Origin: Octopus bimaculoides
Taxonomy: Eukaryota
Direction of reading: 5' to 3'
NCBI RefSeq assembly: GCF_001194135.2
Contig: NC_068986.1
Location: 15,583,544 to 15,621,948, forward strand
Length of the DNA stretch: 38,405 nucleotides
Positions 3,075-33,145 of the stretch are shown here, one piece after another (position 1 is the first letter of the stretch; each line of letters begins with the position of its first letter). Made by a program: the position numbers and the translations under genes. Below the pieces are notes generated by a model, which did not search any database, was not told the origin of the DNA, and was given only the letters and a program-made list of their open reading frames with translations.

Positions 3075-3902
3075 CTAATTACAACATCGCTTAAACATCT
3101 CTTTAGTTTTCTCCCGGAATTGTTTACTGATGCAAAAATATATTATACCATTAAAGCTGTTGTTTATGCATGCCAAAATATTGGTAATTAGATATTCAGT
3201 TTTTGACATGATCACTTCACGATAATTGGCAATGTTTGTGCTTATAATAATGGACACAGGGAATGTTATGAGTAAAAATATGGCATTCAAAGTGATTACC
3301 AGACAAAAGGCTTTCTTTGGTTTTTTGCTTTGCCTATCGCGTTGACCAAGATTAGGTCTACGAAGTAATTTGTATGACATTAGAATAGTGCTTAAAAGTA
3401 AAATGGTTGTTGGTATGTAGGAATAAATACAGCAGAATATGAAAACAGTTATTGTATGAGAAACGAAGGGTCGGTATAGTAAAGTGGCAGAAAGTATAAA
3501 CGAACAAATAAGAACTGTTGATAATGCAATAATAAGGTAAATACTTTTCCTTGAACTGCTCGCTACAGTTAACGGCAAAAATACGGATAATAGACGTTCA
3601 AATGAGATAAGCACAGTTATCGATGAAGACAAATAGTTTAGAAATAGGCTTAAGAGTAGAGCAAAATTAAAGTGTGCAACTGAGCGTTGGTAACCGAATG
3701 GTGGTATTAAAATATCTAATATATCTATCCATAATGCGATAATGTCAACAGCAGCCAACGAAATAAGATATGGAGCGATTTTAGATTCTTTCATCACTTT
3801 GGAACACATGACGACGATAACAAGTACGTTAGTGATACTTCCAAGAATTAAAACAAAGATGTAGCTGCATTGGATAGATATAATACCATATGTGTTGTTC
3901 AT
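3075..3902 (-). CDS. Intronless class A (rhodopsin-like) GPCR, 275 aa, compact orphan receptor; putative chemosensory / FMRFamide-receptor-srw-like (paralog 1, intact)
   Basis: ATG-to-TAG ORF with seven hydrophobic segments and class A motifs: TM1 GSITN, TM2 LAAVD, TM3 ISFER, TM5 YIP, TM6 FLLITFP, TM7 NNSFNGIIY, helix 8 SKQFR, C-terminal CC. N-terminal NNT sequon present. Confidence 0.92.
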   Translation of the reverse strand: MNNTYGIISIQCSYIFVLILGSITNVLVIVVMCSKVMKESKIAPYLISLAAVDIIALWIDILDILIPPFGYQRSVAHFNFALLLSLFLNYLSSSITVLISFERLLSVFLPLTVASSSRKSIYLIIALSTVLICSFILSATLLYRPFVSHTITVFIFCCIYSYIPTTILLLSTILMSYKLLRRPNLGQRDRQSKKPKKAFCLVITLNAIFLLITFPVSIIISTNIANYREVIMSKTEYLITNILACINNSFNGIIYFCISKQFREKTKEMFKRCCN

Positions 3903-5238
3903 ATTTGTCAGTGAAAAATATTGCTTAAGATTTCATATGCAAACTACATTGGGTTATATATAACATAGCATAAGAACAATGTTGTAAAGGAAATATTACA
4001 ATCATGTTTTGTTGCAATTGTTCTTCTGTTCTCCCTGCAGGTATTCTATATTTGTATGTGACATCTCCACTAAATGATTATTGTATGAGAAACATCTATT
4101 TGAAACATATATTAATTATACTGAGTACACTGGATTAGCAGACATGGTTCAGCCTCCATGTGATACTAACTCCCAATAGGAGAAAATTGTCTTCAAGAAA
4201 ATATGCTTTTTAACTAATTGGTTCACAAACAATGAAATAGTGAAAATTAAGTAAAAATTATAAAGAATTGATATAGTGAAAAGTTACCTTGTACAGAATA
4301 AAGATGTACTATTTGATTAGATATTGTCAAAGTTCATAATATATTGGAAAAATAAATTATAGAATACATATATCGTTCTGGTAGATTTGAATTCGATAAA
4401 ATATCGATTAACACTTTGTACAATTTTTATAAAAGAAAATCCTCAAAATATAAACGTTCAACGAATCATTCCAATACCATTGTATTGCAGTTGATGTTGC
4501 TCTCGTTGCCCAGAGGGAAATCTGGTGTGTTCAAGCAGATATATGCTGGTGCTCCAACCGTGACTAACCAATCATTTTAGTGGTATGGTATATTGCACTC
4601 TCTAATACATTACTGTTTTTTTTTCCATTTAAGGGAGAATGCTTTGATTTAAAAAGTCTGTTGGTAATGCCTCTCTTGTTCGACTATGTTGAGAATTTTT
4701 AATTGCTTATCTCATTAACGTTATTTATTTAAAGAACTTTAACATAATGGTTTTGGTAATATAAATATTTAATTAGCATTTAATTACATAAATGATCCAC
4801 GTCAGGCATAATAAAATAAACTCCAGGTAATATAGCATACGCACGATGGTCGCTCTTCTCTGATGTATCTAGTAACATGATAAACTGGTTGTATTCGAAG
4901 CTTTAGTGGAAGGCTATCAGTGCAAAATTCTCTTCGTTGTTTCGTCCTTTCTTGAATTTCTTAATGCCTTAATTGCGTAAGTTAGAAATTGAAAGAATTT
5001 CCTGAAGATGTACCAATAAACAGTGGCGGCATGTCGAATTACACAATTAGGTTATACTTGTTTTAAAATTTCGTAAATATACTTTCTTCTAGATATTGGA
5101 CATCAGTTGAACATTTGACAATATTTCATTTTAGCAGATAACACTCACCTGAAATATATATATAAAAAAAATACAAACTATAGTACATTAATAAATTACA
5201 AGACATTAATAAATAATAATCGTTTTTACTACAATTAC

Positions 5239-5566
5239 AAGGCCTGAGAATGTTGGGGGAGGCTGGTTAGTCGATTACGTCATCCTCAGTGCTTGACTGG
5301 TAGTTATTTTATCGAATCCAAAAAGATGAAAGCATAGTCGTCCTCGATGGCATTTCAGCTGAGAACCGAATGAATCGGAAAAAATGCCGCAGAGCAACTT
5401 ATACGACACTATAATGATCTTGACAGCGCTGTCTGTCTTAAAAATATCGGTTTCAAATTTCTGCACAAGACCAGGAGATCCGGGGGAGGGCGTAAGTCGA
5501 TTACATCGATCCCTGTGCTCAACTGTACTCATATTTTGGACCAGAAAAGGATAACAGGAAAAACTA
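5239..5566 (-). mobile_element. Cephalopod tRNA-derived SINE, family A (OR1/Meta-type core): one decayed copy plus an adjacent 3' fragment
   Basis: Reverse complement reads ...gaggacgactatgctttcatctttttggattcgataaaataactaccagtcaagcactgagg..taatcgactaacc..ccccaacattctcaggcctt, matching the better copies at 16750 and 27111. Confidence 0.7.
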
Positions 5567-5768
5567 TTTCGGTGGCTTTCAAATCAGAGCGTAGAGATTG
5601 AACGTAATGCTGTTAATAATTTCTGTCTTATAGAATTCTCGGCAGAAATAAACTATTCATTATAAAAGGGATACTTATATCGAAAGAAAAGTGTACACTC
5701 ATAACGCGACTGACATGTCATAAACAAGATACGAGCATCAACGATATGTAACTCCATCAGCGATATCC

Positions 5769-5813
<45 letters not shown>

Positions 5814-6516
5814 CATATATATATATATAGTGAAATTCCGGCTGCAAAATGGCCATACACAGAATTTTAGACTGCATTACGCAAATTCTCTCGCTATAAC
5901 AAACGAGGCTTTTAAGAAGCCAAACCCAATCGATATCCCGAATATGATTATGAGAAAGAAAATATTGATTGAAATGAATTTCCGTAATTTCATTTCTGAA
6001 AGAAACTACAAGGAGCTACCAGGAGCTGATATATAGACACTAATACAACCTAATAAAAAGATTAAATTATAACATAGGTCGTATTTTAAATATATCTTGC
6101 CTAAAAGAAAAACTGTTCTGTACATATACACACTAAAATATATAAGTGTGTAGCATTGCAGTATTATGAGAGCGTGTACCTATCGAAGAACTGCGATTTT
6201 GCATGTGATATAACACCTAAATAATGTTTAGTAGTTCTTGGAAATCGTGCATATACGAAATCCAATCAGGTATGAAACGTAGTCTTCCCTAAGATTTTGG
6301 TTTGGGATTATATACGTTGGATAAAGCAGGAGTCTTTATTGTAACATCATATATTGCATCATATTTACACGGGTTTCACTAGTAAATATCTTTGTGTTGT
6401 ATGATAATCGTTATGTAGAGAATTGCATAATCCCATCTGAATGCCAGGTCTTCAGAAGAAAAGAGATTTTTAATCCACCGTTTGACCGTAAGATCTCAAC
6501 CAACCCCACCTCATAT

Positions 6517-6570
<54 letters not shown>

Positions 6571-6599
6571 AAAATACAAGTGTTGAAAACATTTGACCG

Positions 6600-8095
6600 G
6601 TTTCACAGTTTACACTGGTTTTCAAAAATTTGAAATACACAGACGTGGCTAATGTCGGAGTTGTTTGGTTTCTGAATAGTGTTTGAAACTGTCCTATTTT
6701 TATAGGATGTTCATGGCTCAAATTAGTATATGTTTTAAATAACGTTTCATTGGTAGAGGATAGTCATATGATTGGTCTTAGAAATGTTTGTAGATTCCCC
6801 GCTACGTCCCTGCAATAGAATCAAGTGACAATTTTAGCGTTGTAAACTAAGGCTGGTACCGTTGACTGAAAAAGTCGAGCGAGAGTACTAAACAATCAAT
6901 ACTGCCAATATCTTCTGTCAAGTGCTTGGAGAGAAGGAACACGTGATGAACTTTAGAAAGTTTTGTATGCTTCCCGTCAGGACCGTGCGTTAGTGTCAAT
7001 TTGCTGTATTTTTAGCGCCTAAAATGAAGGCCGATTCGGTTGAGTGAACATGCTTAGTTACATTCTAAGCACTCCAATTTTAATGTCTGATGGTAGAGTA
7101 GATAGGAATCGTTTGTATGCGGTGCTGTGGCTAAAACATAGGCTCTTAGCTACTTAGGTTCCTTATGTTAAATGGCAGAATGAGTTTTTTGTGTGAATAG
7201 TTATTTGTGAATGTACTATGTTAAAGTTTATGAAGTCTGTGCTTGTACTTTTGTAAGAAAATATTCTCTTTGTTTATCCGTGCTTTATCTGTGGTATTCA
7301 CCGAACATGGAGTAGGAGGACCTGGAATTTGGGCGGGACTTATTTTGTGCATATATGTCTGCGTTCACTCCTTGGAATCTGTCTAGTATTAGTGTCTCGT
7401 ATTTCAATGGTCAGTCTTATTTCTAAGAGTAAACATTGTTTGAACTATGTAATCTTCATTACATCTTTGATGCTTGACAGTGAATATTAAATTCCTAGAA
7501 GAATATGAAGAGTAATTTTTTTACAATAAAAATCTGTCCTGATTTGAATTTCTATGTTGTGTCTTCAATAAGATTGATGTAGGTCTCACAATTGGGGCGG
7601 CCACACTTTTTGACTTCCCCGATTGTTGGACTCGCATACATTTGCAGGGCCTTGATTGTAACTATACATGTTCACAAAACCGTGTCAGCCTTCATTTTAG
7701 GTGCATCTTATCACTAATGCATGGACCTAGCGGGAAACATAGAATGTTCTAAATCAATCAGATGTTTATTTTCTACAAACACTTCACACACAATATTTAG
7801 AACATTGATTGTTTTGTACTACCACTCGTATTGTTCACTAAATCGTATCACCCTTAACTTACGACGCTAAATATTGTGACTTGATAGTAACACACGGACG
7901 TACAAACATTTCTAAAACCAGTCATGTGACTATCCTTTACCAAATAAACTCCATTCAAAACATATACTAATTTGAGACATGAAGTCCCTAAAAAAAATAG
8001 GGAAAGATTCAAACAGTAGTTAGAAGCAAGACAGCTAAAATATTAGCCACATCTTTTTATTTCAAATTTTTGAAAATCAGTCTAAACTGTGAAAC
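6600..8095 (-). mobile_element. Penelope-like element remnant: degenerate GIY-YIG endonuclease region (~7215-7620) flanked by ~440-bp inverted repeats (6600-7052 and 7667-8095)
   Basis: Minus-strand translation across stops and frameshifts: VKKCGRPNCETYINLIEDTT*KFKSGQIFIVK / SRNLIFTVKHQRCNEDYIVQ / EIRDTNTRQIPRSE / EYFLQKYKHRL. This matches the PLE Cys linker plus GIY-YIG layout (KC.RP.C..C...C.S.NLIY.I.C..C...YIG). The two arms align as reverse complements at roughly 70-80% by eye. Confidence 0.75.
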
Positions 8096-8194
8096 TCCTT
8101 AAATCTTTAAGTATAATAATGAAACATATATTAACTCTTCTCAGTGCATTTTCAACTTCTATTTTACTTATATTTCCACCCGCGTGGAATTGAA

Positions 8195-8430
8195 TAACTT
8201 TGTATTCTCTCCCTCTCTCTCTCCCTCTTTCTCTCTCTTCCTCTCCCTCTCTCTCACTCTCTCTCTCCCCTCTCTCTCTCCCTCTCTCTCCCTCTCACCC
8301 TGTATCTCTCTCTCCCTCTCACCCTGTATCTCTGTCTCCCTCTCTCTCTCCCCCTCCATCTCTCCCTCTCCCTCTCCCTCTCTCCCTCCCTATCTCTCTC
8401 CTCTCTGTCTCCCCACCACCTGTCTCTCTG
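8195..8430. repeat. Degenerate (CT)n polypyrimidine tract with short internal tandem duplications
   Basis: Directly visible. Source of the spurious ORFs 8168-8486. Confidence 0.9.
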
Positions 8431-9081
8431 TATACGCGCTATTTTGTGGATTTCTTCTAGTGTACGTTTCGAAAATCTATCTATAAGTTGTCCTTGCTAT
8501 GGCGAACTGTGCTTCTATTTCATCGATTCTCTCATGCGGAGTTCAAACTCTTCTGTTGAAATATNNNNNNNNNNNNNNNNNNNNNNNNNNNNNNNNNNNN
8601 NNNNNNNNNNNNNNNNNNNNNNNNNNNNNNNNNNNNNNNNNNNNNNNNNNNNNNNNNNNNNNNNNNNNNNNNNNNNNNNNNNNNNNNNNNNNNNNNNNNN
8701 NNNNNNNNNNNNNNNNNNNNNNNNNNNNNNNNNNNNNNNNNNNNNNNNNNNNNNNNNNNNNNNNNNNNNNNNNNNNNNNNNNNNNNNNNNNNNNNNNNNN
8801 NNNNNNNNNNNNNNNNNNNNNNNNNNNNNNNNNNNNNNNNNNNNNNNNNNNNNNNNNNNNNNNNNNNNNNNNNNNNNNNNNNNNNNNNNNNNNNNNNNNN
8901 NNNNNNNNNNNNNNNNNNNNNNNNNNNNNNNNNNNNNNNNNNNNNNNNNNNNNNNNNNNNNNNNNNNNNNNNNNNNNNNNNNNNNNNNNNNNNNNNNNNN
9001 NNNNNNNNNNNNNNNNNNNNNNNNNNNNNNNNNNNNNNNTATATATATATATATATTACCATCCATGAGTTTTCAGGTGAC

Positions 9082-9510
9082 TTGCATATTAGTTCCAGAT
9101 TCAGTTCAGTACGTTATCACTGAAGATTTGGATATGAGACGCGTGTCTGCCAAGTTTGTGCCAAAACTGCTTACAGCTGACCAAAAAGACATTCGGATTT
9201 CAGTTGCACAAGGTTTTTATTTGATTATGGCGACAACACGAAAACTTTTGAAACCTTTGCGTAGGTCTTTGAGCAAGTATCGCCCAGATTTTGGCAAAAT
9301 TTGAAGCTGATTTCCTGCTCAACTATCTTTGTCATGGTCAATGAAACGATTACCTGCTTTACACCTTCCTTCCAAGAAGTGTTGTAAACAGGGGAAATGA
9401 GCAATATCGTCAAAACTTAGTGCGCATGCACAGTAGAGTTAAAGGTCAAACTGTGCCAAGCGGCTTCACTATGGCAACCGTCCGGCTACTTACTGACCAG
9501 AGCACGTGTA
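9082..9510. mobile_element. Rearranged mariner (Tc1/mariner) remnant: mid-transposase piece on +, 5' end and N-terminus on -
   Basis: + strand 9082-9215: SVQYVITEDLDMRRVSAKFVPKLLTADQKDIRISVAQ (mariner linker, W/FVP.L motif). - strand 9234-9340: MTKIVEQEISFKFCQNLGDTCSKTYAKVSKVF (mariner N-terminal EQR..IKFC.KLG). A TIR-like terminus TACACGTGCTCTGGTCAGTAAGTAGCCGGA reads from 9510 on -, abutting (TA)n. Confidence 0.75.
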
Positions 9511-9580
9511 TATATATATGTTAACAAACAAATGCACAATTTCGTGATGAATGTTATCACCCTCACTATCACTGACTCAC

Positions 9581-9621
<41 letters not shown>

Positions 9622-10289
9622 CAATCTATCTCTCTCACTCGCCTAATCTCTCTCTGACCAAAGAAATTCTATTTCCCCCCTAACTACAACACCACCATCA
9701 ATAAAACCTATCATGTATTACATATGCACGCGCACAAATATATCAAACGTATTTGTTTATATGTATATATATGAATATAATGCTATCCTCTTTTAAACAA
9801 CGCACGCATATGAGTGTCTCGGAAGTCAGCCAAAATGTTGAATTTTAACTCCCTTTTGTGAACATTATTCCCCGATGAAATACTCAATTAGCCAGTTTGA
9901 AAACGAAAATTTAAATTAAATTAAATTAAATTAAATTTTGTAATAGAACTAATTGGATATGGAAACGATTATAGGACTAGAATTTCATTATATGGATTTG
10001 AATATCTTTGAGGAAACTGATATCTGCATGCCAATTTCTCCATTTTCTGTTTCTCATATATATATATATATACCTGTAATATAATATGTGACGATTATTC
10101 GGTTGCCATAATGAGACTCCGAGTTACGATGTCGGAGCGGAAACCTGCTCCAGCATCTCCTCATTTATCAAAGCAATGAAACGTTTAATAGATAAATTCC
10201 TCTATTTCCTTAATATCGAGATCTCTTTCATGCTTTTGTGATCTTACCTTTACTATTGATATATATATATAATATACGAGGGACTTCTT

Positions 10290-10425
10290 TCAGGTTCCGT
10301 TCATGAGATCCACTCACAAGCCCTTCGTCGATCTGAGGCTACAAAGCAAAACACTTGCCGAACGTGCCACGCAATGAGACAGAATCCCCAGCTACGTGCT
10401 TGGAAAGCAAGCTTCCTACCACATA
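10290..10425 (-). mobile_element. SINE family B, 5' (tRNA-like) head fragment
   Basis: Matches the heads at 21862-21988 and 36812-36968 (atccactcacaag..cacttgcc..gtgccacgca.tg.gac.gaa..aagcaagctt..tacc). Confidence 0.7.
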
Positions 10426-10464
10426 CACACACACACACACACCTATATTTGACAACAGTGAATA

Positions 10465-11024
10465 ATAAATGCCCTGATGCAGTACCAGGCAGTGGCTCTC
10501 ATGTCTTCTGATCTTAATTGATTGGAAGTGTTATCAAGTACATTGCTTTGTCTTGGTATACAAGATGGGCTACAGCAAATATTCTGCTCAATACCACAGA
10601 TTTGCTTGTCAGTTGCTTGATCTTAACCAGTTGAGAATGTCCTTTAGTGGCTGATGATATGTGCATCTCTGATCACGAGCAGAAGTAGTGGGGCAGCATG
10701 ATAGTCATATGTCGAGAGGAATTCTTTGGGGTTTGGATAGTTCACCTTTGGAAACATGGGTATTTTGTTCGACATCCTCAAACAACCTTTATTCAAGGAC
10801 ATTTTGAGCGGGATGGGCTACTCGACCTGAAGAAAATTCTAAGTAGGCCCCACCTGCAAGGTCATGCGCTGTTTATCTTGATATGAGACTACTATGTCGC
10901 CCACATATGGTTGTGATGCATGTGCCTGGTGTGCCCTTATCAGACGGGTAGTCATGATGGGTATAATGGACTTTGTATATTTTACCCCAGTGTCACTTTG
11001 ATGGCATGCCCTGCTCTCGCACTC

Positions 11025-11071
<47 letters not shown>

Positions 11072-11079
11072 TAATAATA

Positions 11080-11147
<68 letters not shown>

Positions 11148-11160
11148 AATGGTGATGATG
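10465..11160 (+). mobile_element. Probable retroposon 3' end terminating in an (AAT)n then (GAT)n tail; family unassigned
   Basis: GC-elevated non-coding block ending ...ctgctctcgcactc immediately before a long (AAT)n/(GAT)n run. No protein motif recognised. Confidence 0.4.
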
Positions 11161-11484
11161 ATGGTAAAATACTACGTATGTAATCTCAAATTTTAAAACG
11201 AACTCATAATTTTCTTATGTTTTCTTAAGCATTCTCTAGAGCAGTACTATGTGCAAAACCAAACATATGACACCCTAGGCATTGCATCAAAATGAACTTC
11301 TAACTTGTTGTCCCTTGAGGTCTCTGGGTGAAACTTGGAGTCAACTGGTACAATTATAATGCAAAAGTCAAACATATAATAATAACTAGCTGGACCCGTG
11401 AAAAATTGATGGAAAACATTAAAAATGCAAGCATCTGTAAACAGTGAACTGGTGTCATGAGAAATGTTTGCATATTATGAGCAG

Positions 11485-11605
11485 CTGTCTCTACGTTCTG
11501 AGTTCAAATTTTGCCGAGGTCGACTTTACCTTTCGTCCCTTGGAGCTCGATAAATTAAGTATCAGTTGTGTACTGGGGCCGATCTAATCAACTGGCCCTC
11601 TCCTC
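11485..11605 (+). mobile_element. SINE family A fragment
   Basis: acgttctgagttcaaattttgccgaggtcgactttacctttcgtcc..gataaattaagtatcagttgtgtactggggccgatctaatc, the same core as the other family A copies. Confidence 0.8.
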
Positions 11606-12289
11606 GATGTGATTCACCTTGGTGATTTGATAATTCTACACCCATACGATGGGTCTTTATGTTCGTAGCAAAAATAACGTTTAAGTGACTTTTTACAAAA
11701 TCGCTTTACAATGTATCGAAAATATTTAGAAAAGTAAATATAAACTGCTTTATGATACCCTTTTTGGAATTTAGAAATTTGAAAATCTCAGAGGCGTCTA
11801 TGACATCTGCTCATGTCAGAAATTAGTCTATATTATTAAAAACACGAAATATTTCCAGTCATTTTATTGATGATTTGCATATATAAAGGTATAGACACCG
11901 AGAGGCTGTTGTAAGCTGCGGCTGGCTAACCGCTGTATCACATATGCTTGGCCACGGTGGGAAATACTTTTCGTTTACCTACAGACTTTGATGTTATAAT
12001 CACAATAATAAATATAACTTTTTAAGTTTTCAGTTTTCGGAACGGAGTTTCCGTATTCGTTCTTTGTCTCAACGAGTTTCTCGTATTCTAATTTGAGACG
12101 AAACTGGAGATAGAAGTTATTGTGCATTCCTTTATTTGTTGTAAAATGTGCGAACATGTGAACATGTGTTTTAGATTCGAAGAATGAATTTACTCTTTGC
12201 GGTCATAGCAATATCGGTTATCATTGGTTATGGTTGAATGGCGCCAGGATGGAGTCCACAACTTAGGGCATCATATATGAATGGAAAAA

Positions 12290-12331
<42 letters not shown>

Positions 12332-12712
12332 CAGCATCAGAATTAATTTTGCAGGTGTAGTAGTACTAGTACTAGTGGTGGTGATGGTGGTATTGGTGAC
12401 AATGGCGACGGTGGTAGTAATAGCAGTATGATAAGTATTAACATTTGCAGTTGCGTGGATATTTTTTTTATGCTCACGTCAATTTATTCAACAATCAGAC
12501 ACTTTCCAATAGAATTCGAATCATACGGGCGTGTCGCCTTTCATACGTTCGGAGATGATAGAATAATTGTCATTCAAGCAAAGTGGCGGATCTATTCAAC
12601 TACCCATTCCTCTCATCATTCTATGAACATTTCTCTTCGCTTCTTCGATTCTGTTACTTAACCTAAATTATTAGATATCGCAAAATTATAAATGAGGTCA
12701 CATGTCACTTGT

Positions 12713-13537
12713 TTAATTTCTTTTCCTCATACAAACTATTTCTTTGAATGTATTCCTGAATTGTTTACTGATTAAGAAATATACAATACAATTTACAGCA
12801 TAGTTAATCGTGGAACAAACGTCTGCAATTAAAAATGCATGCGAAAACTTAGAATCGTCGAGACCAGTTAAAATTGCAACAGTCGCCACAGGAAAAGTTG
12901 TAAGAAGAAATATAACATTTATACTGATCGCAAGATACATAGTATTTCGCGACTGTGTATTGTCGTGTTGCTGCTGGCCTAGACGCGGCCTGTTAAATAA
13001 CTTGTATAACAGGAGAATATTGCTTACTAATAAAAAAGCCGCTGGGATGAAGGCATATAGAAAAGCTACTGTTATCGAAAGCATCATCTCAGAAACGATA
13101 TTAGAGTATACCAACGTAGTATTAATTGTTAATAGACTTATGAACGTCGTTGATATTACAAAGAAGAAAGAATACATGTGGTTTGGCATATGCTTAAATT
13201 TAAATGGCAAGTACACGGCCAACAAACGTTCAAGGGAGATAATAATTGTTATAAATGAAGACATGTCATTGGCGTTAAAAATTAAGTATCTGTAAAAAAT
13301 ATATGTCGTTTCAGACAATTCAATTTCAGACGAAATCAAGATAATACGTAGTAAATTTAACCATACAGTGATAATATCTGTAACAGCCAAAGAAATAATA
13401 TACGGTGTGATTTTCAAACCTCTCATCTTCTTTGAACTCATAACTATGATGACGATTAAATTGTTTAGAGTGCCAAAAGACAGTATGAAAATGGAGATGC
13501 ATAGTGCAACTGCGTTTATTGTCGTATCTAATACCAT
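12713..13537 (-). CDS. Intronless class A GPCR, 274 aa, compact orphan receptor (paralog 2, intact)
   Basis: ATG-to-TAA ORF, seven hydrophobic segments: GTLNN, LAVTD, ISLER, FIP...SN (N at 5.58), FLLTTFP, NYAVNCIVY, SKQFR, C-terminal Cys. Colinear with paralog 1 at roughly 35-40% identity by eye. Confidence 0.92.
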   Translation of the reverse strand: MVLDTTINAVALCISIFILSFGTLNNLIVIIVMSSKKMRGLKITPYIISLAVTDIITVWLNLLRIILISSEIELSETTYIFYRYLIFNANDMSSFITIIISLERLLAVYLPFKFKHMPNHMYSFFFVISTTFISLLTINTTLVYSNIVSEMMLSITVAFLYAFIPAAFLLVSNILLLYKLFNRPRLGQQQHDNTQSRNTMYLAISINVIFLLTTFPVATVAILTGLDDSKFSHAFLIADVCSTINYAVNCIVYFLISKQFRNTFKEIVCMRKRN

Positions 13538-15701: not shown

Positions 15702-16004
15702 NNNNNNNNNNNNNNNNNNNNNNNNNNNNNNNNNNNNNNNNNNNNNNNNNNNNNNNNNNNNNNNNNNNNNNNNNNNNNNNNNNNNNNNNNNNNNNNNNNN
15801 NNNNNNNNNNNNNNNNNNNNNNNNNNNNNNNNNNNNNNNNNNNNNNNNNNNNNNNNNNNNNNNNNNNNNNNNNNNNNNNNNNNNNNNNNNNNNNNNNNNN
15901 NNNNNNNNNNNNNNNNNNNNNNNNNNNNNNNNNNNNNNNNNNNNNNNNNNNNNNNGTTTTAAAAAAGATCCCTGGTACTTAATTCATCAGGAATTAAGTA
16001 CCAG

Positions 16005-16588
16005 GGATCTTTTTTAAAACGGGGGCCACATTTTTTATTAACGAAACACTTTGAAACTTGGAACACTGGTAGAATGTGTCATATAAAACATCTTTTTCTC
16101 TTAGTCTTCTTAAAAAAAAGAAACCCATCAGTTATTCCATGTGAAAGTCGTCGTATTTCTGTAATTTCAACCAATCACTGACGTCCATTCAGCCGATATA
16201 CATTAAGTGCCGACTACATAAACAAACGATTCTGGAACAATTAACCCTAACCCTAACCCTAACCCTAACCGTAGGGTTAGGGTTAGGGTTAGGGTTAAAG
16301 CAAATTTAAAATGAAAAAAGCAAATAAAACGAAGGTATGGAGATTAAATACGCTTTACATCGCTTAATCAGGCAAAGGAGTAAATATAACCAACTGAATA
16401 CTTGTTAGTGATTGGTTGAAATTATCGAAATAAGACAAATTTTTACATGAAATAAATTCGAATACAAAGATATTTTTCTGTTCTATAACACAAAATAGAT
16501 AAGTATACGAAGTTTGAAAGTCTTTCCGTACCAAAAACACGACGTAAAACATTAATGAAAAATGTGGCCCCCGTTTTAAAATAGATCC
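16005..16588. mobile_element. Non-autonomous DNA transposon (MITE), copy 1: 30-bp TIR starting GGATCT, 8-bp TSD AGTACCAG, telomere-type repeats in the centre; Merlin-like or hAT-like
   Basis: Left end GGATCTTTTTTAAAACGGGGGCCACATTTT and right end AAAATGTGGCCCCCGTTTTAAAATAGATCC differ by 1 mismatch. AGTACCAG is duplicated at 15997-16004 and 16589-16596. Homologous to 30752-31426 in the opposite orientation. Confidence 0.85.
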
Positions 16589-16599
16589 AGTACCAGTTA

Positions 16600-16696
16600 C
16601 GACCTCGGTGGAATTTGAACTCAGAATGCAGCGACAGTCAAAATACCACAAAGCATTAGGTCTAGTGCGCTAACGATCCTGCCAGTTCACCGCCTT
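16600..16696 (-). mobile_element. SINE family A 5' half, reverse orientation
   Basis: Reverse complement aaggcggtgaactggcaggatcgttagc...ttctgagttcaaattccaccgaggtc matches the head of the 27111 copy. Confidence 0.75.
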
Positions 16697-21439: not shown

Positions 21440-21988
21440 TATATATATATATATAATAATATTAGGGACAAAATCCAAAATTACAGGTAAAAAACTCAAT
21501 TAAAATCAATTTATAAAAAATTAGAATTAAATTGAGCCTTATAAAATAAAGTATATATAAAATATATAGTTTTAGGGAAAATAACAAATTTTCAAGAACT
21601 CATTTATTATATTATATTTATCTTATGATATTTACTTTACTTTATATTATACTCATTTATTGTGCTTTTAATTATTAATTTTTCTATNNNNNNNNNNNNN
21701 NNNNNNNNNNNNNNNNNNNNNNNNNNNNNNNNNNNNNNNNNNNNNNNNNNNNNNNNNNNNNNNNNNNNNNNNNNNNNNNNNNNNNNNNNNNNNNNNNNNN
21801 NNNNNNNNNNNNNNNNNNNNNNNNNNNNNNNNNNNNNNNATATATACATATACGATAGGCTAGGCTTCTTTCAGTTTCCGTCTATCAAATTCGCTCACAA
21901 GGCATTGGTCGGTTCGAGCCCAAGGTGCCACGCAGTGGGACTGAATCTGGAACCACGAGGTTGTGAAGCAAGCTTATTATCACAGACA
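21170..21988 (-). mobile_element. SINE family B, tail (21170-21381) and head (21862-21988) separated by an internal (CA)/(TA) microsatellite, an AT-rich tract and an N-gap
   Basis: The tail matches 29121-29285 and 35868-36075. The head matches 10290-10425 and 36812-36968. The same tail-microsatellite-head order recurs at 35868-36968. Confidence 0.7.
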
Positions 21989-23577: not shown

Positions 23578-24130
23578 TAAGCAGTTACTAACAAAACCTA
23601 GTGCTCCACTTATTGTTTCAATGTATATGAATTCATAGTCTGGACATAAAAGCTGGAGGTTATTACGACACTGCTGATTGATGCCGGAAACGTAATGAGG
23701 AGAAACACAGCAACAATTGAGATTACGATGCGAATGGAATTGTGTAACTGTGGTTACAAGTTGTGAGAAAACTACTGGCCGAGCTTTGGTGGATTCAATA
23801 TTTCATATATTGTGGCGAAAGAACTCACGATTATGAAAACCGCTGGTACGAACAATTACACGAATAAAGATAGCAAACGGATAACTCTTGTTATCTTTTG
23901 CGAATAAAGCAACAAGTATGTAAGTCTTAGTCATAAAAATAAAAACAGAAGAGATTACACAATACGGTGTATAGGTATTAGAAAAGAAACGATATGATAA
24001 GGGAATATAAACCGCAAACAGACGTTCTATGGAAATAATTACAATTATCCATGAAGAGTATATATTTAGTATGGTACATTCTACTAAAAATTCTGAGTCC
24101 ATCAATAAGAAGCGTATATGAATTATATAT
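23578..24130 (-). pseudogene. GPCR paralog 3, pseudogene (ECL1/TM3 to early TM7 visible; TM1-TM2 presumably in the 24131-24842 gap)
   Basis: The frame is open from the gap edge: YIIHIRFLL..YSSWIIVIISIERLFAVYIPLSYRFFSNTYTPYCVI. A +1 frameshift near 23862 is followed by *LFVPAVFIIVSSFATIYEILNPPKLGQ*FSHNL*PQLHNSIRIVISIVAVFLLITFPASIS (stops at 23856-58, 23772-74, 23754-56). A second shift near 23640 gives YEFIYIETISGALGFVSNCL, after which homology is lost. Closest to paralog 4. Confidence 0.88.
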
Positions 24131-24910
24131 NNNNNNNNNNNNNNNNNNNNNNNNNNNNNNNNNNNNNNNNNNNNNNNNNNNNNNNNNNNNNNNNNNNNNN
24201 NNNNNNNNNNNNNNNNNNNNNNNNNNNNNNNNNNNNNNNNNNNNNNNNNNNNNNNNNNNNNNNNNNNNNNNNNNNNNNNNNNNNNNNNNNNNNNNNNNNN
24301 NNNNNNNNNNNNNNNNNNNNNNNNNNNNNNNNNNNNNNNNNNNNNNNNNNNNNNNNNNNNNNNNNNNNNNNNNNNNNNNNNNNNNNNNNNNNNNNNNNNN
24401 NNNNNNNNNNNNNNNNNNNNNNNNNNNNNNNNNNNNNNNNNNNNNNNNNNNNNNNNNNNNNNNNNNNNNNNNNNNNNNNNNNNNNNNNNNNNNNNNNNNN
24501 NNNNNNNNNNNNNNNNNNNNNNNNNNNNNNNNNNNNNNNNNNNNNNNNNNNNNNNNNNNNNNNNNNNNNNNNNNNNNNNNNNNNNNNNNNNNNNNNNNNN
24601 NNNNNNNNNNNNNNNNNNNNNNNNNNNNNNNNNNNNNNNNNNNNNNNNNNNNNNNNNNNNNNNNNNNNNNNNNNNNNNNNNNNNNNNNNNNNNNNNNNNN
24701 NNNNNNNNNNNNNNNNNNNNNNNNNNNNNNNNNNNNNNNNNNNNNNNNNNNNNNNNNNNNNNNNNNNNNNNNNNNNNNNNNNNNNNNNNNNNNNNNNNNN
24801 NNNNNNNNNNNNNNNNNNNNNNNNNNNNNNNNNNNNNNNNNNTATATATATATATATGCTTATATACCTACGTATATGTACATACTTACGCCTATACGTA
24901 TATATATAAA

Positions 24911-25561
24911 CGTACGTGGACGTCATGAAACGTGTACAACAAAAAATACGAAGCACAAGTAAATGGGACATGAACTATTCTTTCGAACGACGAAAGACGC
25001 AAATGGAAAACAAAACAAGCAACTTAAAAAACGGCCCTTCATCAGTTGTTGCTATTTTTCTAGTTTCGTATTTCAAGCATTTAACAACGATATACGCTTT
25101 CGATAAAACAGTTGCTCCCGCAAAGCAAATTAAATAATAATTTAGGATTTTGCGGAGGGTCAAAACAGGTAACAGAAACAGGACAGTGAAAAGAAATAGG
25201 AAGGGCTGCTAAGCCTGAACGACGTTGTTGTGGCGAACGCGTAAATCAAACGAGGACAGGAGAAAAACAAGAACATGCCTTCCTTGTTGCAGCCACACCG
25301 GAGAAAAAGAAAGAAACACAAGTTAGGAGAATAAAGATAGCCGATGGTCATGTGAAAGCCATGTGAGCAAGAGAGGATGAGTGAAGGAGAGAGTAACAGA
25401 GTAATAGGAAAGAATAGTGGGAGGAGAGGGAGTAAAAGAATATGAGAAGGAAAGAGAGAAAAACGAAAGAGTAAAAGGTCGCATAGAGAACGTATCAGAA
25501 TTATTACGATAAAACTTACTTGGAAGGTGATGCATGGCGTTTAATCATATAATAAAATAAA

Positions 25562-25592: not shown

Positions 25593-27110
25593 NNNNNNNN
25601 NNNNNNNNNNNNNNNNNNNNNNNNNNNNNNNNNNNNNNNNNNNNNNNNNNNNNNNNNNNNNNNNNNNNNNNNNNNNNNNNNNNNNNNNNNNNNNNNNNNN
25701 NNNNNNNNNNNNNNNNNNNNNNNNNNNNNNNNNNNNNNNNNNNNNNNNNNNNNNNNNNNNNNNNNNNNNNNNNNNNNNNNNNNNNNNNNNNNNNNNNNNN
25801 NNNNNNNNNNNNNNNNNNNNNNNNNNNNNNNNNNNNNNNNNNNNNNNNNNNNNNNNNNNNNNNNNNNNNNNNNNNNNNNNNNNNNNNNNNNNNNNNNNNN
25901 NNNNNNNNNNNNNNNNNNNNNNNNNNNNNNNNNNNNNNNNNNNNNNNNNNNNNNNNNNNNNNNNNNNNNNNNNNNNNNNNNNNNNNNNNNNNNNNNNNNN
26001 NNNNNNNNNNNNNNNNNNNNNNNNNNNNNNNNNNNNNNNNNNNNNNNNNNNNNNNNNNNNNNNNNNNNNNNNNNNNNNNNNNNNNNNNNNNNNNNNNNNN
26101 NNNNNNNNNATATATATATATATATACATATGTATATATATATGCATGTATATTTTTCTTGTTTGCACCAACATACCTATGAATATATGAATATATTTAT
26201 ATGTATATATCGGTCTGTGTATGTGCGTGTGTATGTGTGTATGTGTGTGTAAGTGTCTCTAATTATGGCCTTCCACTACAGGAGTATTTCACTTCTATCA
26301 ATAGTGTCTTTCGTTCTTATAGAGATAATATAGTTACCGTCATTAAGACAAGAGGACTTATGAAGGAAGGAAGGAAGGAAGGCTGTATATCATGAGTGAT
26401 ATAATATTTGAATTTTCAATAACTTTCCATGAAATACTCGTCGATAAACACATGCTGCTTGACTACTGCGTCTGATATTTACATTCGTTGATGACAAACT
26501 CATTGCTGTTGCTGTCGCTGCAGTCGAGACTGTCTGCACTAATTCTGCAACCTCTGCTGATGGTACTGAGGTTGGTGATAATGACATTTCCAAAGCTGTG
26601 ATGAGAATTATTATCAGTTAACATGTACATATTACAATGTTTAACGTTCAGAATAGCAACGGGACGTACATCCGTTGAGTTAATCCGCAGCAATCCCTAG
26701 TTATGATTAATGAGACACATACAATTTGTATGTATACATGTATGTGTATGCGGTGCTGGTGGTGGTGGCTGCGTGTGTTTGTATGCATGTTTCTACAGAT
26801 ACGCCTATACACATACACATATTGATGTTAAAACAAGAAACTCAAAATTCTTAGAGATGTTTATCGTGGTTAAATGGAAGAAAGTTTCTAAATACTAAAA
26901 TATATGCTAAAGGTTTCTCTCTCACTAAAACAAAGCGATTCAGTCATACTTAAATAAATGGATAAGTAAACTGAAATAAAATCTGTGTTAATATTTCATG
27001 ATATCAACTAAATAAATTCATATATGTTTCTTATAAGTCCCCGTTATTCTGGTGTTTTGTTTCCTGCCGATCATTGTTGTGTGATAGCTGCATCCATTGT
27101 AGCCATCGCT

Positions 27111-28679: not shown

Positions 28680-29285
28680 TTATTCTTTTATTTGTGTCTG
28701 TCATTTGACTATGGCTATACTGGAAAACCAACTTGAAGGGTCTCAGTCGAACAAATCGACCTAACGACTTATTTTTCAACGGTTTATTCTCCCGGACACT
28801 TGGGTGGAAACACAAAGACGTAAATACACAAAATCCGGTTGTCGAGCGGTAATAGTGGAGGTGGGGTGCAAACATAGAGACGAAGGCATACACAGACACA
28901 CAGACACACGCACACACATTCATGCAGACATACACACACATATATATACATATATATAGATGTATGTGTATATATATACATATATGTATATATATATATA
29001 NNNNNNNNNNNNNNNNNNNNNNNNNNNNNNNNNNNNNNNNNNNNNNNNNNNNNNNNNNNNNNNNNNNNNNNNNNNNNNNNNNNNNNNNNNNNNNNNNNNN
29101 NNNNNNNNNNNNNNNNNNNTTTTATTCTTTTATTTGTTTCAGTCATTTGTCTGCGGCCATGCTGGAGCATCGCCTTTAGTCTAACAAATCGACACTAGGA
29201 CTTATTCTTTGTAAGCCTAGTACTTATTCTATCGTCCTGTTTTGCCGATACGCTAAGTTACGCGGACATTAACACACCAGCATGT
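28680..29285 (-). mobile_element. Two SINE family B tail fragments (28680-28880, 29121-29285) with microsatellite and an N-gap between them
   Basis: Both start ttattctttta/tttg.ttcagtcattt g.ct..ggc.at.ctgga, as in the 21170 and 35868 copies. Confidence 0.65.
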
Positions 29286-29629: not shown

Positions 29630-30180
29630 AAACAACATAAAGAACAGCCCTTCATCAACTGTTGGCTGGTTTTCTAGTCTCGTATTTCGAGCGTTTAACA
29701 ACAATATACGCTTTCGATAAAACATTTACTCCCGCAAAGCAAATTAATTAAAATTTGGGATTTTCTGAGGGTCAAAATTGGTAACACAAACAGGACAGTG
29801 AAAAGAAACAGAAATAGCTGCTATGTCTAAACGTGGTTGTGGTGGCGAACGTGTAAATCAAGCTAGGACAGGAGACAAATAAGAACACGTCTTCTGTTTT
29901 CCAGCTACAACGGAGAGAAAGAAAGAAACACAAGTTAGGAGAACAAAGACAGATGGCAGATGCTCATGTGGGAGCCACGTGAGCAAGGGAGGAGGAGTGA
30001 GGGAGAGAGAGTGACAGCTTAATAAGATAGAATAGTAGGAGAAGAGGAGTTAAAAGAATAAGAGATAGAAAACGAGAGAAAAACGAAAAAGTAAAAAGAT
30101 CTTATGAGTGCCCATTAGAATTAAGATAAAACTTACTTGGAAGAGGATGCGAGGCGTTCAATCATATAATAATATCAATA
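29630..30180. mobile_element. ~650-bp dispersed element, copy b (one end truncated)
   Basis: Colinear with 24911-25562 from aacaacataaagaac onward, flanked by (TA)n on both sides. Confidence 0.7.
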
Positions 30181-31920: not shown

Positions 31921-32796
31921 TTAGATATGACGGCGTTGCAATATGTATACATTTTGACGTTGAAATTCCGTCTTTCGACAGCATATTTGTTTTAGATACT
32001 GTCGGAATTTTTAACTTGTAATCAAATACGCTATAAAATTGAGACTATAATTTGTGAGAGACAGGGTATTTAAGAGGAACTGGATGTTTTTTTAGTAGTC
32101 TCATTATAGCCGTTTATTACAACCTTAGCGATGGATGTAGGAATCTTGGTGAGAAGGAAAACAGCATTGATAGCGATTACAATGCGAATGGAATTGAATA
32201 ACTGCGATGACAAGTTGCGACAAACACGTTGGTCGAATTTAGGCCGCTTCAATATTTTATATATCGTAGCGATAGAAATCACAATTAGAAAAACCGCTGG
32301 TATGAATGCATACATAATAACGATAGCAATATAATAATGCTCTTGATTCTTTACGAATATTTTGATTAATGTGAATGTCATAGAAACAAAAACATAAACA
32401 ACCAATATTACACAATAGGGTGTATACGTCTTAGAAAAGAAACGCTCGGATAAAGGAATGTAAACGGCAAACATGCGTTCTATGGAGATAACTAGAGTTA
32501 ACCATGAAGAAGCCATACTTAAAACATAAAGGATTGCCCAGGCAAATAAGGGTATATTATTTATGATAGATCTTAGATGGATAAATGTATAATATATGTG
32601 CATCAAGAAATACGTACATATTAAAATCAAATCTACAAGAGCCAGGCAAACGATGTATGGAGCGAATTTCACGTTACGAGTTGCTTTCCTGCAAAATATT
32701 CCAATGACTGCTAAATTACCGAATGTTCCGAAAATCAATATTGTTATTGAGCCATACTGTATAAAACTAATGATAATAATATCTGTGTTGTTAAAT
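31921..32796 (-). pseudogene. GPCR paralog 4, full-length but disrupted
   Basis: The frame covers NNTDIIIISFIQYGSITILIFGTFGN..LALVD..ISIER..FIP..FLLTKIP. There is no in-frame ATG back to the stop at 32841-43; caaatATTTaac here corresponds to caaatATGaac in paralog 1. A frameshift at an A7 run (+ strand T 32087-32093) leads into NIQFLLNTLSLTNYSLNFIAYLITS*KFRQYLKQICCRK...HI*, with a nonsense codon at 32011-13 and the terminal stop at 31921-23. Confidence 0.88.
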
Positions 32797-33145
32797 ATTT
32801 GAGAATTGTTGTTTATTTTGGGTGTTTCGTGTTCTTTAGTTTAAATATTTTGTTAAAATATGAAATGTTATAAATTTGTTTGAAGTATTTAGAAATGGAT
32901 GCAGAATTGATCCAAAGAGACCACCTACTTAATGATATAACACTCTTACATTCGTGTATTTTCGGTATACTAATCTCACATATGTATGCAATATATTAGG
33001 TTAAAATATTTCGATGTAATTCTAATAGGTTCCTCGCATTATGTACTTTAATTTGTCAACCAGTTGTTAAAAATATACGTACAAGCCATACTCCACAACC
33101 ACAATGGTATCATGCGCATATATTAATATACTCCTTATATGTGTG

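What the first reader, a model, noticed from the sequence alone, without database searches (positions are those of the whole stretch)
3075..13537. Ultra-compact 7TM design: no ECL2 lid, no TM3-ECL2 disulfide, almost no N-terminus
Both intact receptors fit seven helices into 274-275 aa. The distance from R3.50 to P5.50 is 61 residues in paralogs 1 and 2 and 59 in paralog 4, versus 80 in rhodopsin (R135-P215) and the beta2-adrenoceptor (R131-P211), so ECL2 is only a few residues. Position 3.25, the near-invariant class A disulfide Cys, is F, Y and P in paralogs 1, 2 and 4, and ECL2 has no Cys. W4.50 is also absent. Loss of this disulfide with a tiny ECL2 is rare in class A (melanocortin receptors are the textbook case) and implies a wide-open or membrane-accessible pocket. 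All copies share the architecture, so it is a family trait rather than decay. Suitability for bulky or lipophilic surface cues is a hypothesis.
Basis: partly seen in the sequence, partly recalled or inferred. Interest (0 to 1): 0.8.

Follow-up and report, generated by a model that had tools for sequence, protein, structure and literature searches.

The report
Lidless, pared-down octopus class A receptors
The window carries a tandem cluster of small octopus-type G-protein-coupled receptor genes. They belong to a clade that has lost the usual outer lid loop and its disulfide bridge, as melanocortin receptors have; this is real and fairly unusual, but what the receptors sense is unknown.

Summary

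**Genes.** Two intact single-ORF class A GPCR genes lie on the minus strand: P1 at 3075-3902 (275 aa) and P2 at 12713-13537 (274 aa). Two decayed paralogs follow: P3 at about 23660-24129 and P4 at about 31921-32840. The gap at 8565-9039 is intergenic and touches no receptor ORF.

**Measurements.** R3.50 to P5.50 is 61, 61 and 59 residues. Position 3.25 is F, Y and P. There is no loop cysteine.

**Structure.** An AlphaFold2 model of P2 (pLDDT 80.5) gives seven helices plus helix 8. ECL2 is 5 residues and the N-terminal tail about 6.

**Family.** A whole-library HMMER search found a clade of 15 compact sequences, three of them from this window, with spacing 58-62 and no C3.25. NJ bootstrap support is 98/100. 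At least three of the twelve outside the window are Octopus bimaculoides proteins.

**Relatives.** The nearest relatives have spacing 63-70. Most keep C3.25 and an ECL2 cysteine, and one was modelled with a 13-residue beta-hairpin loop. The next 128 class A hits have a median spacing of 80, and 126 have C3.25. The compaction is therefore a derived clade trait, not decay.

**Function.** The intracellular face is conserved and the extracellular face variable, as expected for working receptors. The open-pocket idea rests only on analogy with MC4R (4-residue ECL2, spacing 57). Ligand, expression and coupling are untested.

**Prior work.** Loss of the disulfide in mollusc class A expansions has been published. 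The short ECL2 has not.

The parts
3075..3902 (-). P1: intact single-ORF class A (Srw-like) GPCR gene, 275 aa. Key residues: N1.50 at 3828-3830, F3.25 at 3669-3671, R3.50 at 3594-3596, P5.50 at 3411-3413, N-G-x-x-Y in TM7 at 3138-3152, C-terminal CC.
   Evidence: The nearest in-frame upstream stop is 11 codons before the ATG.
12713..13537 (-). P2: intact single-ORF class A (Srw-like) GPCR gene, 274 aa. This is the protein modelled with AlphaFold2.
   Evidence: An in-frame stop lies 6 codons before the ATG, with no AG dinucleotide in between.
13091..13105 (-). ECL2 of P2: residues 145-149, S-N-I-V-S, the only non-helical residues between TM4 (118-144) and TM5 (150-182). It contains no Cys.
13301..13303 (-). 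Position 3.25 of P2 (Y79), where nearly all class A relatives have the disulfide Cys.
8565..9039 (.). Assembly gap (475 N) in the P1-P2 intergenic region, flanked by TC and TA microsatellites. It is not part of any receptor ORF.
23660..24129 (-). P3: pseudogene fragment covering TM3 to TM6 of a spacing-59-type paralog. It has at least two frameshifts, and its 5' end is lost in the gap at 24131-24842.
31921..32840 (-). P4: pseudogene of the spacing-59 type. It has no ATG, a frameshift between TM6 and TM7, and an in-frame stop just after TM7, at the start of helix 8. It is about 70% identical in protein to the O. bimaculoides protein P0011.

Best explanation
P1 and P2 are functional, intronless members of an octopod-specific clade of Srw-like class A GPCRs. 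The clade sits in a birth-and-death tandem array and has secondarily lost almost its whole extracellular superstructure.

**Starting point.** The ancestor had the canonical C3.25-ECL2 disulfide and a short beta-hairpin ECL2.

**What changed.** The clade lost both cysteines and about 8-10 loop residues, leaving a 5-residue TM4-TM5 turn. ECL1 and ECL3 are also about 5-6 residues, the N-terminal tail is about 6 residues, and the C-terminus is little more than helix 8.

**Shown.** The signalling core is kept: N1.50, D2.50, E-R at 3.49-3.50, P5.50, F6.44, P6.50, N7.49, Y7.53, helix 8, and a conserved ICL3 motif R-P-x-L-G-Q.

**Inferred.**
- The receptor still couples to an intracellular transducer.
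- Ligands reach the helical-bundle pocket directly, without a lid, as in melanocortin receptors.
- Diversification of the outer helix halves tunes specificity.

The ligand class (peptide, small molecule or lipid) is not known.
For: **Gene integrity.** P1 and P2 are open ORFs of 275 and 274 codons in DNA of about 32% GC. Their start codons align with those of several relatives, and in-frame stops lie just upstream.

**Fold.**
- P2 model: pLDDT 80.5, pTM 0.76. Helices are 2-33, 44-69, 76-109, 118-144, 150-182, 194-226, 232-256 and H8 258-273.
- Foldseek: 977 PDB matches at E<=0.001. Every hit in the top 50 listed is a class A GPCR.

**Clade.**
- 19 library proteins score E<1e-30.
- The compact set of 15 is monophyletic in 98 of 100 NJ bootstraps. 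Spacing is 58-62 and none has C3.25.

**Direction of change.**
- The nearest relatives have spacing 63-70. Seven of nine keep C3.25 plus an ECL2 Cys.
- The model of one of them, P0016, shows a 13-residue ECL2 with two short strands.
- Two O. bimaculoides-type sequences, P0019 and P0165, keep the longer loop but have lost both Cys, which looks like an intermediate state.
- 126 of the 128 further relatives have C3.25.

**Constraint.**
- Mean column entropy is 1.46 bits on the intracellular side and 2.23 bits on the extracellular side, Mann-Whitney p = 2e-12.
- dN/dS is 0.49 between P1 and its orthologous copy in a related species, even though that copy is now a pseudogene.

**Precedent.** MC4R has a 4-residue EL2, no TM3 disulfide and a 'wide-opened extracellular vestibule' (PMC8563958).
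Against: - There is no expression, ligand or coupling evidence of any kind.
- Two of the four copies in the window are pseudogenes. The P1 ortholog in a related octopod (L003) is also a pseudogene, with several frameshifts and an in-frame TGA. Turnover is therefore high and constraint on individual copies may be weak.
- P1 and P2 each differ from their own family at two near-invariant positions. W3.41 is S in P1 and F in P2. F7.50 is G in P1 and C in P2.
- The AlphaFold2 alignment was shallow (16 sequences), and pLDDT across TM4 and ECL2 is only about 72-81 (10-residue blocks, residues 121-160).
- Pocket openness was not measured.
Confidence: 0.6

Rival explanations
1. P1 and P2 are recently dead or dying copies in a decaying array. 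Their ORFs are still open only because too little time has passed, and the compact architecture is inherited but no longer used in this species.
For: - P3 and P4 next door are pseudogenes.
- The P1 ortholog in a related species is a pseudogene.
- P1 and P2 carry substitutions at family-invariant W3.41 and at F7.50.
- Neither protein is present in a 15-billion-protein collection, so no pipeline has called or annotated them.
Against: - About 275 stop-free codons in AT-rich DNA would not stay open for long without selection.
- All core switch residues are intact in both: N1.50, D2.50, E/R3.49-3.50, P5.50, F6.44, P6.50, N7.49, Y7.53.
- dN/dS is 0.49 against a copy that has itself been drifting, which implies constraint on at least one lineage.
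- C or G at 7.50 also occurs in the intact relative P0001.
Confidence: 0.2
2. The short form is an annotation illusion. The real genes have further coding exons, either an upstream exon giving a normal N-terminus or spliced sequence within ECL2. In that case the proteins are ordinary-sized class A receptors.
For: - Only genomic sequence was examined.
- P4 has an open frame but no ATG, which could in principle mean a splice acceptor.
- Some clade members have N-terminal tails of 30-60 residues.
- An AG exists in the 10 open codons upstream of the P1 ATG and within codons 3-4 of P2.
Against: - TM4, ECL2 and TM5 are one uninterrupted reading frame in every copy, so splicing could only remove sequence there, not add it.
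- In P2 a stop lies 6 codons upstream of the ATG with no AG in between.
- The start Met aligns in P1, P0002, P0012, P0014 and P0019.
- The same spacing of 58-62 is seen in 12 independently called proteins from other assemblies.
- The relative P0016 is one contiguous 954-nt gene on a 166-kb contig.
Confidence: 0.05
3. The compact receptors no longer bind an extracellular ligand. They would act as constitutively active, membrane-lipid-sensing or accessory (co-receptor or chaperone) 7TM proteins, with the extracellular face pared away because it is not needed.
For: - All three extracellular loops and the N-terminus are trimmed together. Compared with the 125 relatives that align at all six landmark residues, the shortening is about 24 residues in the N-terminus, 4 in ECL1, 19 in ECL2 and 8 in ECL3.
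- The toggle residue W6.48 and P7.50 are absent.
Against: - T6.48 and F7.50 are shared with thousands of ordinary-length Srw-like relatives, so they do not mark loss of ligand gating.
- The outer halves of the helices are the most variable part of the clade. That is the pattern of diversifying ligand pockets, not of a disused surface.
- MC4R shows that a 4-residue ECL2 is compatible with high-affinity ligand binding.
Confidence: 0.15

Closest known systems
Melanocortin receptors (MC1R-MC5R; structure of MC4R, PMC8563958)
   Same: - Class A fold with an ECL2 of only 4-5 residues and no Cys in it.
- No Cys at 3.25, so no TM3-ECL2 disulfide.
- Similar R3.50-to-5.50 spacing: 57 in MC4R, 59-61 here.
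- In MC4R this gives a wide-open vestibule.
   Different: - No detectable specific relationship. The best PDB sequence hits are TRH and neuromedin-U receptors at about 1e-6, and MCRs are not among the top hits. The resemblance is therefore convergent.
- MC4R compensates with an ECL3 disulfide, an N-terminus-ECL3 disulfide and a Ca2+ site built on D3.25. It has an N-terminus of about 40 residues, M at 5.50 and canonical DRY, CWxP and DPxxY motifs.
- The octopus proteins have no extracellular Cys at all. They have P5.50, ERL, T6.48 and N(F/C/G)xxY, and are about 55 residues shorter overall.
[quoted passage not shown] 2025, PMC11886862; Ritschard et al. 2019, PMC6408891)
   Same: - Tandemly clustered, fast-evolving, taxon-restricted class A genes with pseudogenes among them.
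- The extracellular side is more variable than the intracellular side.
- Nath et al. report that the typical TM3-ECL2 disulfide is absent from these expansions, cephalopods included.
   Different: - Nath et al. describe ECL2 as long (25-30 residues) and ECL1 and ECL3 as 15-20 residues. Here ECL2 is 5 residues and ECL1 and ECL3 are 5-6.
- In my sample of the 128 nearest relatives, 126 do have C3.25. Loss of the Cys is therefore specific to this clade and a few others, not general.
- Neither paper describes a compact clade.
Nematode serpentine chemoreceptor families Srw and Srsx (Pfam PF10324, PF10320)
   Same: - P1 and P2 score above the Srw cut-off, and P2 above the Srsx cut-off.
- P2 residues 21-267 align to Srsx profile positions 3-256 of 257 with almost no net length difference. 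That suggests a comparably compact 7TM core.
- Both are candidate chemoreceptor expansions.
   Different: - The Pfam scores are modest (33-43 bits) and the 7tm_1 model matches as well, so this is superfamily-level similarity, not membership of a nematode family.
- Whether Srsx proteins lack C3.25 was not tested here.

Membership tests
Class A (rhodopsin-like) GPCR, Pfam 7tm_1 | Sequence match to the family profile above the curated cut-off | tested here: met
   P1 scores 34.9 bits and P2 42.0 bits against a cut-off of 30.5. The P4 relic scores 32.7.
Class A (rhodopsin-like) GPCR, Pfam 7tm_1 | Seven transmembrane helices plus helix 8, with a fold superposable on solved class A receptors | tested here: met
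   The AF2 model has seven helices plus H8. Foldseek TM-scores are 0.7-0.8 to OX1R/OX2R, alpha1A, H2R and CCK1R.
Class A (rhodopsin-like) GPCR, Pfam 7tm_1 | Core landmark residues N1.50, D2.50, R3.50, P5.50, P6.50, N7.49 and Y7.53 | tested here: met
   All are present in P1 and P2 and in 13-15 of the 15 clade members.
Class A (rhodopsin-like) GPCR, Pfam 7tm_1 | Conserved C3.25-ECL2 disulfide, W4.50, W6.48 and P7.50. These are typical but not obligatory. | tested here: not met
   Position 3.25 is F, Y or P, and ECL2 has no Cys. Position 6.48 is T and 7.50 is G or C. The last two are shared with the whole Srw-like superfamily.
Class A (rhodopsin-like) GPCR, Pfam 7tm_1 | G-protein coupling on ligand binding | not testable with these tools
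   Needs a cell-based assay.
Srw-like invertebrate receptor superfamily (Pfam 7TM_GPCR_Srw) | Profile match above the cut-off, and the shared motif set E-R-[LMFV] in TM3, T6.48-x-P6.50 and N-F-x-x-Y in TM7 | tested here: met
   Srw scores are 37.2 and 43.2 bits against a cut-off of 22.2. The motif set is shared with 128 of 128 next-best relatives. P1 and P2 themselves have G or C instead of F at 7.50.
Octopod compact clade (defined here) | R3.50-P5.50 spacing of 58-62, non-Cys at 3.25, no ECL2 Cys, ICL3 motif R-P-x-L-G-Q, and monophyly | tested here: met
   (bootstrap 98/100). P1 and P2 fall in the spacing-61 subclade with P0001 and P0002. P4 and P3 fall in the spacing-59 subclade.
Melanocortin receptor family | Sequence relationship to MC1R-MC5R | tested here: not met
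   No MCR appears among the 43 PDB sequence hits at E<=1. The best hits are TRHR and NMUR1.
Melanocortin receptor family | D3.25 Ca2+ site and intra-ECL3 disulfide | tested here: not met
   Position 3.25 is F or Y, and ECL3 has no Cys. The MC4R features come from PMC8563958.

The most novel reading that the evidence does not exclude
The octopod compact clade is a naturally minimised class A GPCR, of about 270 residues, with no disulfide, no lid and almost no N-terminus, that is still a working sensor.

Living intermediates exist in the same taxon: Cys pair plus hairpin, then Cys pair lost, then loop deleted. Together they form a stepwise natural experiment on how a class A receptor can dispense with ECL2. 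The result is a lidless pocket used for contact or lipophilic chemosensation in octopus tissues.
Probability: 0.2. Interest if true: 0.6.

Novelty: new variant of a known kind. Interest (0 to 1): 0.42.

Why it matters
ECL2 and its disulfide to TM3 are among the most conserved features of class A GPCRs. They usually shape ligand entry and receptor stability.

- **A second natural case.** This clade removed both features independently of the melanocortin receptors, and intermediate forms survive in the same animals. That gives a comparative system for asking what the lid is for and how a receptor stays stable without it.
- **A small scaffold.** A 270-residue, cysteine-bridge-free receptor could be a convenient minimal scaffold for expression and structural work.
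- **Cephalopod sensory biology.** It adds a defined, unannotated receptor clade to test in suckers, skin or gills, alongside the known nicotinic-like chemotactile receptors.
- **A correction to the literature.** It qualifies a published generalisation. Loss of the disulfide is not general among Srw-like relatives (126 of 128 keep C3.25), and ECL2 is not always long.

Tried and rejected
- **Word-index search with P2 alone.** It found nothing. This was a sensitivity failure, not absence: the full HMMER scan found the family, and later profile searches recovered only 13 and 4 members.
- **Exact look-up of P2 in public assemblies.** Not on record. The genes are un-called in public data.
- **Identifying the species.** I tried the Logan runs SRR118693xx through the literature and got one irrelevant paper. 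The window is not O. bimaculoides if P0011 is the P4 ortholog (about 70% protein identity), but that is an inference.
- **P0006 as a protein homolog.** Rejected. It is a mis-called pseudogene in which a TGA was read through.
- **W4.50 loss as part of the compaction.** Rejected. The relatives show no strongly conserved Trp column in TM4.
- **A hidden fifth paralog in or beside the gap at 8565-9039.** There is no tblastn signal on either flank.
- **The ORF at 9041-9301.** It reminded me of a mariner transposase remnant, but Pfam gave no hit, so I do not claim it.
- **The repeat finder.** Its output was dominated by runs of N and was useful only for the P3/P4 duplication and one interspersed repeat.

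Full report
**What is in the window.** The sequence is AT-rich eukaryotic DNA (about 30-38% GC) with eight assembly gaps. A tblastn of the candidate proteins against the window finds four related loci, all on the minus strand.
- P1, 3075-3902: an intact ORF of 275 aa.
- P2, 12713-13537: an intact ORF of 274 aa.
- P3, about 23660-24129: a fragment covering TM3 to TM6 with at least two frameshifts. It runs into the gap at 24131-24842.
- P4, about 31921-32840: no ATG, a frameshift between TM6 and TM7, and a stop just after TM7, at the start of helix 8.
- P3 and P4 are a tandem pair 8453 nt apart with 73-74% nucleotide identity.

**The gap.** The gap flagged by the scan's program (8565-9039) is intergenic. 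It lies 4.6 kb upstream of the P1 start and 3.7 kb downstream of the P2 stop, is bordered by microsatellites, and has no receptor similarity on either flank. Its continuity and frame therefore do not affect the finding. Only the stated distance between P1 and P2 depends on it.

**Checking the observation.**
- R3.50 to P5.50 is 61 in P1 (R103 to P164), 61 in P2 (R104 to P165) and 59 in P4.
- Position 3.25 is F, Y and P.
- There is no Trp in TM4 and no Cys in any extracellular loop.

P1 and P2 pass the Pfam cut-offs for 7tm_1 and for the Srw serpentine family. By sequence the nearest solved structures are the TRH and neuromedin-U receptors at about 1e-6.

**Structure of P2.** An AlphaFold2 model of P2 was built on 16 family sequences and has mean pLDDT 80.5 and pTM 0.76.
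- Helices run 2-33, 44-69, 76-109, 118-144, 150-182, 194-226 and 232-256, with helix 8 at 258-273.
- ECL1 is 6 residues, ECL2 is 5 (S-N-I-V-S, residues 145-149), ECL3 is 5 and ICL3 is 11.
- Foldseek against the PDB returns only class A GPCRs at the top. TM-scores are 0.7-0.8 to orexin, alpha1A-adrenergic, histamine H2 and CCK1 receptors.

**Could exons be missing?**
- TM4, ECL2 and TM5 form one uninterrupted frame in all copies, so splicing cannot add loop sequence.
- In P2 an in-frame stop lies six codons upstream of the ATG, with no AG dinucleotide between them.
- In P1 the stop is eleven codons upstream.
- The start Met aligns with that of several relatives.
- A relative, P0016, is one contiguous 954-nt gene on a 166-kb contig.

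An acceptor inside the first codons cannot be strictly excluded without transcripts, but nothing suggests one.

**The family.** A word-index search with P2 alone found nothing, and the exact proteins are not on record anywhere. These genes are un-called in public data. A full HMMER scan of 1.84 billion representative proteins with a profile of P1, P2 and P4 found 5781 hits at E<=0.001. Nineteen score E<1e-30, and these are followed by ordinary class A receptors.

Sources of the close hits:
- short contigs assembled from public sequencing runs;
- Octopus bimaculoides UniProt entries named only 'G-protein coupled receptors family 1 profile domain-containing protein' (for example A0A0L8ICK4);
- for slightly more distant relatives, Octopus sinensis LOC115211734 and a cuttlefish protein.

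P4 is about 70% identical to an O. bimaculoides protein (P0011). P1 has a 79%-identical orthologous locus in a related species. The window is therefore from an octopod other than O. bimaculoides (inference).

**Three tiers of relatives.** All hits were aligned to a family HMM, and landmark spacing was measured.

| Tier | n | R3.50-P5.50 spacing | Position 3.25 | ECL2 |
|---|---|---|---|---|
| Compact clade (P1, P2, P4 and twelve library proteins) | 15 | 58-62 | never Cys | no Cys |
| Nearest relatives | 9 | 63-70 | Cys in 7 of 9 | a Cys about 8-10 residues into a longer loop |
| Next 128 hits | 128 | median 80 (5th percentile 69, minimum 60) | Cys in 126 of 128 | not summarised; the eight printed all carry an ECL2 Cys |

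- The model of P0016, from the middle tier, shows a 13-residue ECL2 with two short strands, the classical hairpin.
- Two sequences in the middle tier (P0019 and P0165) keep the longer loop but have lost both Cys.
- The next 128 hits have a median protein length of about 360 aa.
- A neighbour-joining tree recovers the compact set as one clade in 98 of 100 bootstraps. It has a spacing-61 subclade (P1, P2, P0001, P0002) and a spacing-59 subclade (P4 and the rest).

By parsimony the disulfide and hairpin are ancestral, and the compact state is a single derived loss. The evidence is sequence-based, so the order of steps is an inference.

**Where the shortening is.** Compared with the 125 of the 128 relatives that align at all six landmark residues, P1 and P2 are shorter everywhere outside the membrane.

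| Segment | Relatives (median) | P1/P2 |
|---|---|---|
| Position of N1.50 | 49 | 25-26 |
| 2.50 to 3.50 | 54 | 50 |
| 3.50 to 5.50 | 80 | 61 |
| 5.50 to 6.50 | 56 | 51 |
| 6.50 to 7.53 | 45 | 37-40 |
| Tail after Y7.53 | 44 | 20-21 |

The very short N-terminus is shared with the Cys-bearing sister sequences and is longer in the spacing-59 subclade. It is therefore an older and separate trait.

**What is not special.** ER[LMFV] instead of DRY, N at 5.58, T at 6.48 and NFxxY instead of NPxxY occur in essentially all 128 relatives. They are traits of the Srw-like superfamily. The same holds for the lack of a conserved TM4 Trp.

Loss of the TM3-ECL2 disulfide in mollusc, including cephalopod, lineage-specific class A expansions has been published by Nath et al. 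2025 (PMC11886862). That paper describes ECL2 as 25-30 residues and ECL1 and ECL3 as 15-20 residues, and does not mention a compact clade. Ritschard et al. 2019 describe cephalopod-specific class A expansions and their tandem clustering, but not this architecture (PMC6408891).

**Are P1 and P2 working genes?**

Evidence for:
- Both ORFs are open and all core landmark residues are kept.
- Across the compact clade the intracellular side is much more conserved than the extracellular side: 1.46 against 2.23 bits of column entropy, p = 2e-12. There is a conserved ICL3 motif R-P-x-L-G-Q.
- dN/dS is 0.49 between P1 and its ortholog, even though that ortholog is now a pseudogene.

Evidence against:
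- Half the copies in the window are dead, and the P1 ortholog in a related species is dead too.
- P1 and P2 deviate from their family at W3.41 and at 7.50.
- There is no expression evidence.

I put about 0.6 on functional receptors and about 0.2 on recently inactivated copies.

**How it most likely works.**
- Shown: a class A bundle with a conserved signalling face and essentially no extracellular cover.
- Inferred: ligands enter the bundle directly, as in MC4R. There the four-residue, Cys-free EL2 and D3.25 go with a 'wide-opened extracellular vestibule' (PMC8563958). MC4R spacing is 57, from R147 (3.50) and Y212 (5.58).

The resemblance is convergent. MCRs are not among the sequence hits. 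They also compensate with an ECL3 disulfide, an N-terminus-ECL3 disulfide and a Ca2+ site, none of which is possible here.

The nearest solved relatives by sequence and fold are peptide receptors, and MC4R uses its open vestibule for peptides. Neither has been tested.

**Verdict.** The functional part remains a hypothesis by analogy. It is a new variant of a known kind (cephalopod lineage-specific Srw-like class A receptors) and is of moderate interest.

Noticed in passing
window 3075-3902 and 12713-13537 (P1 and P2 residues at positions 3.41 and 7.50): Both intact receptors differ from their own family at two near-invariant positions. W of the 'SSW' motif (3.41) is S in P1 and F in P2. F7.50 of NFxxY is G in P1 and C in P2. 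This could mean relaxed constraint or specialisation of the subclade.
   Followed up: partly
P2 residues 178-188 (window about 12974-13006) and the aligned positions in all relatives: A strongly conserved ICL3 motif, Y-K-L-x-x-R-P-x-L-G-Q, follows TM5 directly in both the compact and the Cys-bearing octopod sequences. It is a candidate transducer-contact motif specific to this group.
   Followed up: no
L003 (Logan SRR11869390 contig), 117-905: This is the orthologous copy of P1 in a related species, with 79% nucleotide identity and a conserved 30 nt upstream of the ATG. It is a pseudogene with indels of -10, -2, +1 and -1 and an in-frame TGA. It was nevertheless called as a 262-aa protein (P0006) in the public collection.
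   Followed up: yes
window 25139-25340, 29751-29952, 36446-36647: Three copies of an interspersed repeat of about 200 nt, 78-83% identical, with no Pfam match in the overlapping ORFs. Probably a SINE-like or other non-autonomous element.
   Followed up: no
window 16367-16669 (-) and 30608-30925 (+): Two ORF-like stretches share a long, nearly identical peptide (…ILKRG.HFS.MF.VVFLVRKDFQTSYTYLFCVIEQKNIFVFEFISCK…) in opposite orientations. This is another dispersed repeat family. The 30608-30925 copy was tested and had no Pfam hit.
   Followed up: partly
window 9041-9301 (+): A short ORF right after the gap reminded me of a mariner-type transposase remnant (…RRVSAKFVPKLLTADQKD…), but Pfam gave no match, so it stays unconfirmed.
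   Followed up: partly
all eight gaps (2392-2690, 8565-9039, 15702-15955, 21688-21839, 24131-24842, 25593-26109, 29001-29119, 33257-33570): In the translated flanks I read (2392-2690, 8565-9039, 15702-15955, 24131-24842, 25593-26109, 29001-29119, 33257-33570), each gap is bordered by microsatellite or low-complexity runs (TA, CA/TG, TC, AAT). The flanks of 21688-21839 were not examined. This fits assembly breaks at simple repeats rather than missing genes. The gap at 24131-24842 does cut off the 5' part of pseudogene P3.
   Followed up: partly
(tool behaviour): The word-index protein search missed relatives that the full HMMER scan found easily. P0001, for example, is 47% identical and shares a 9-residue word with P2. 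'No hit' from that tool should not be read as absence for this family.
   Followed up: yes
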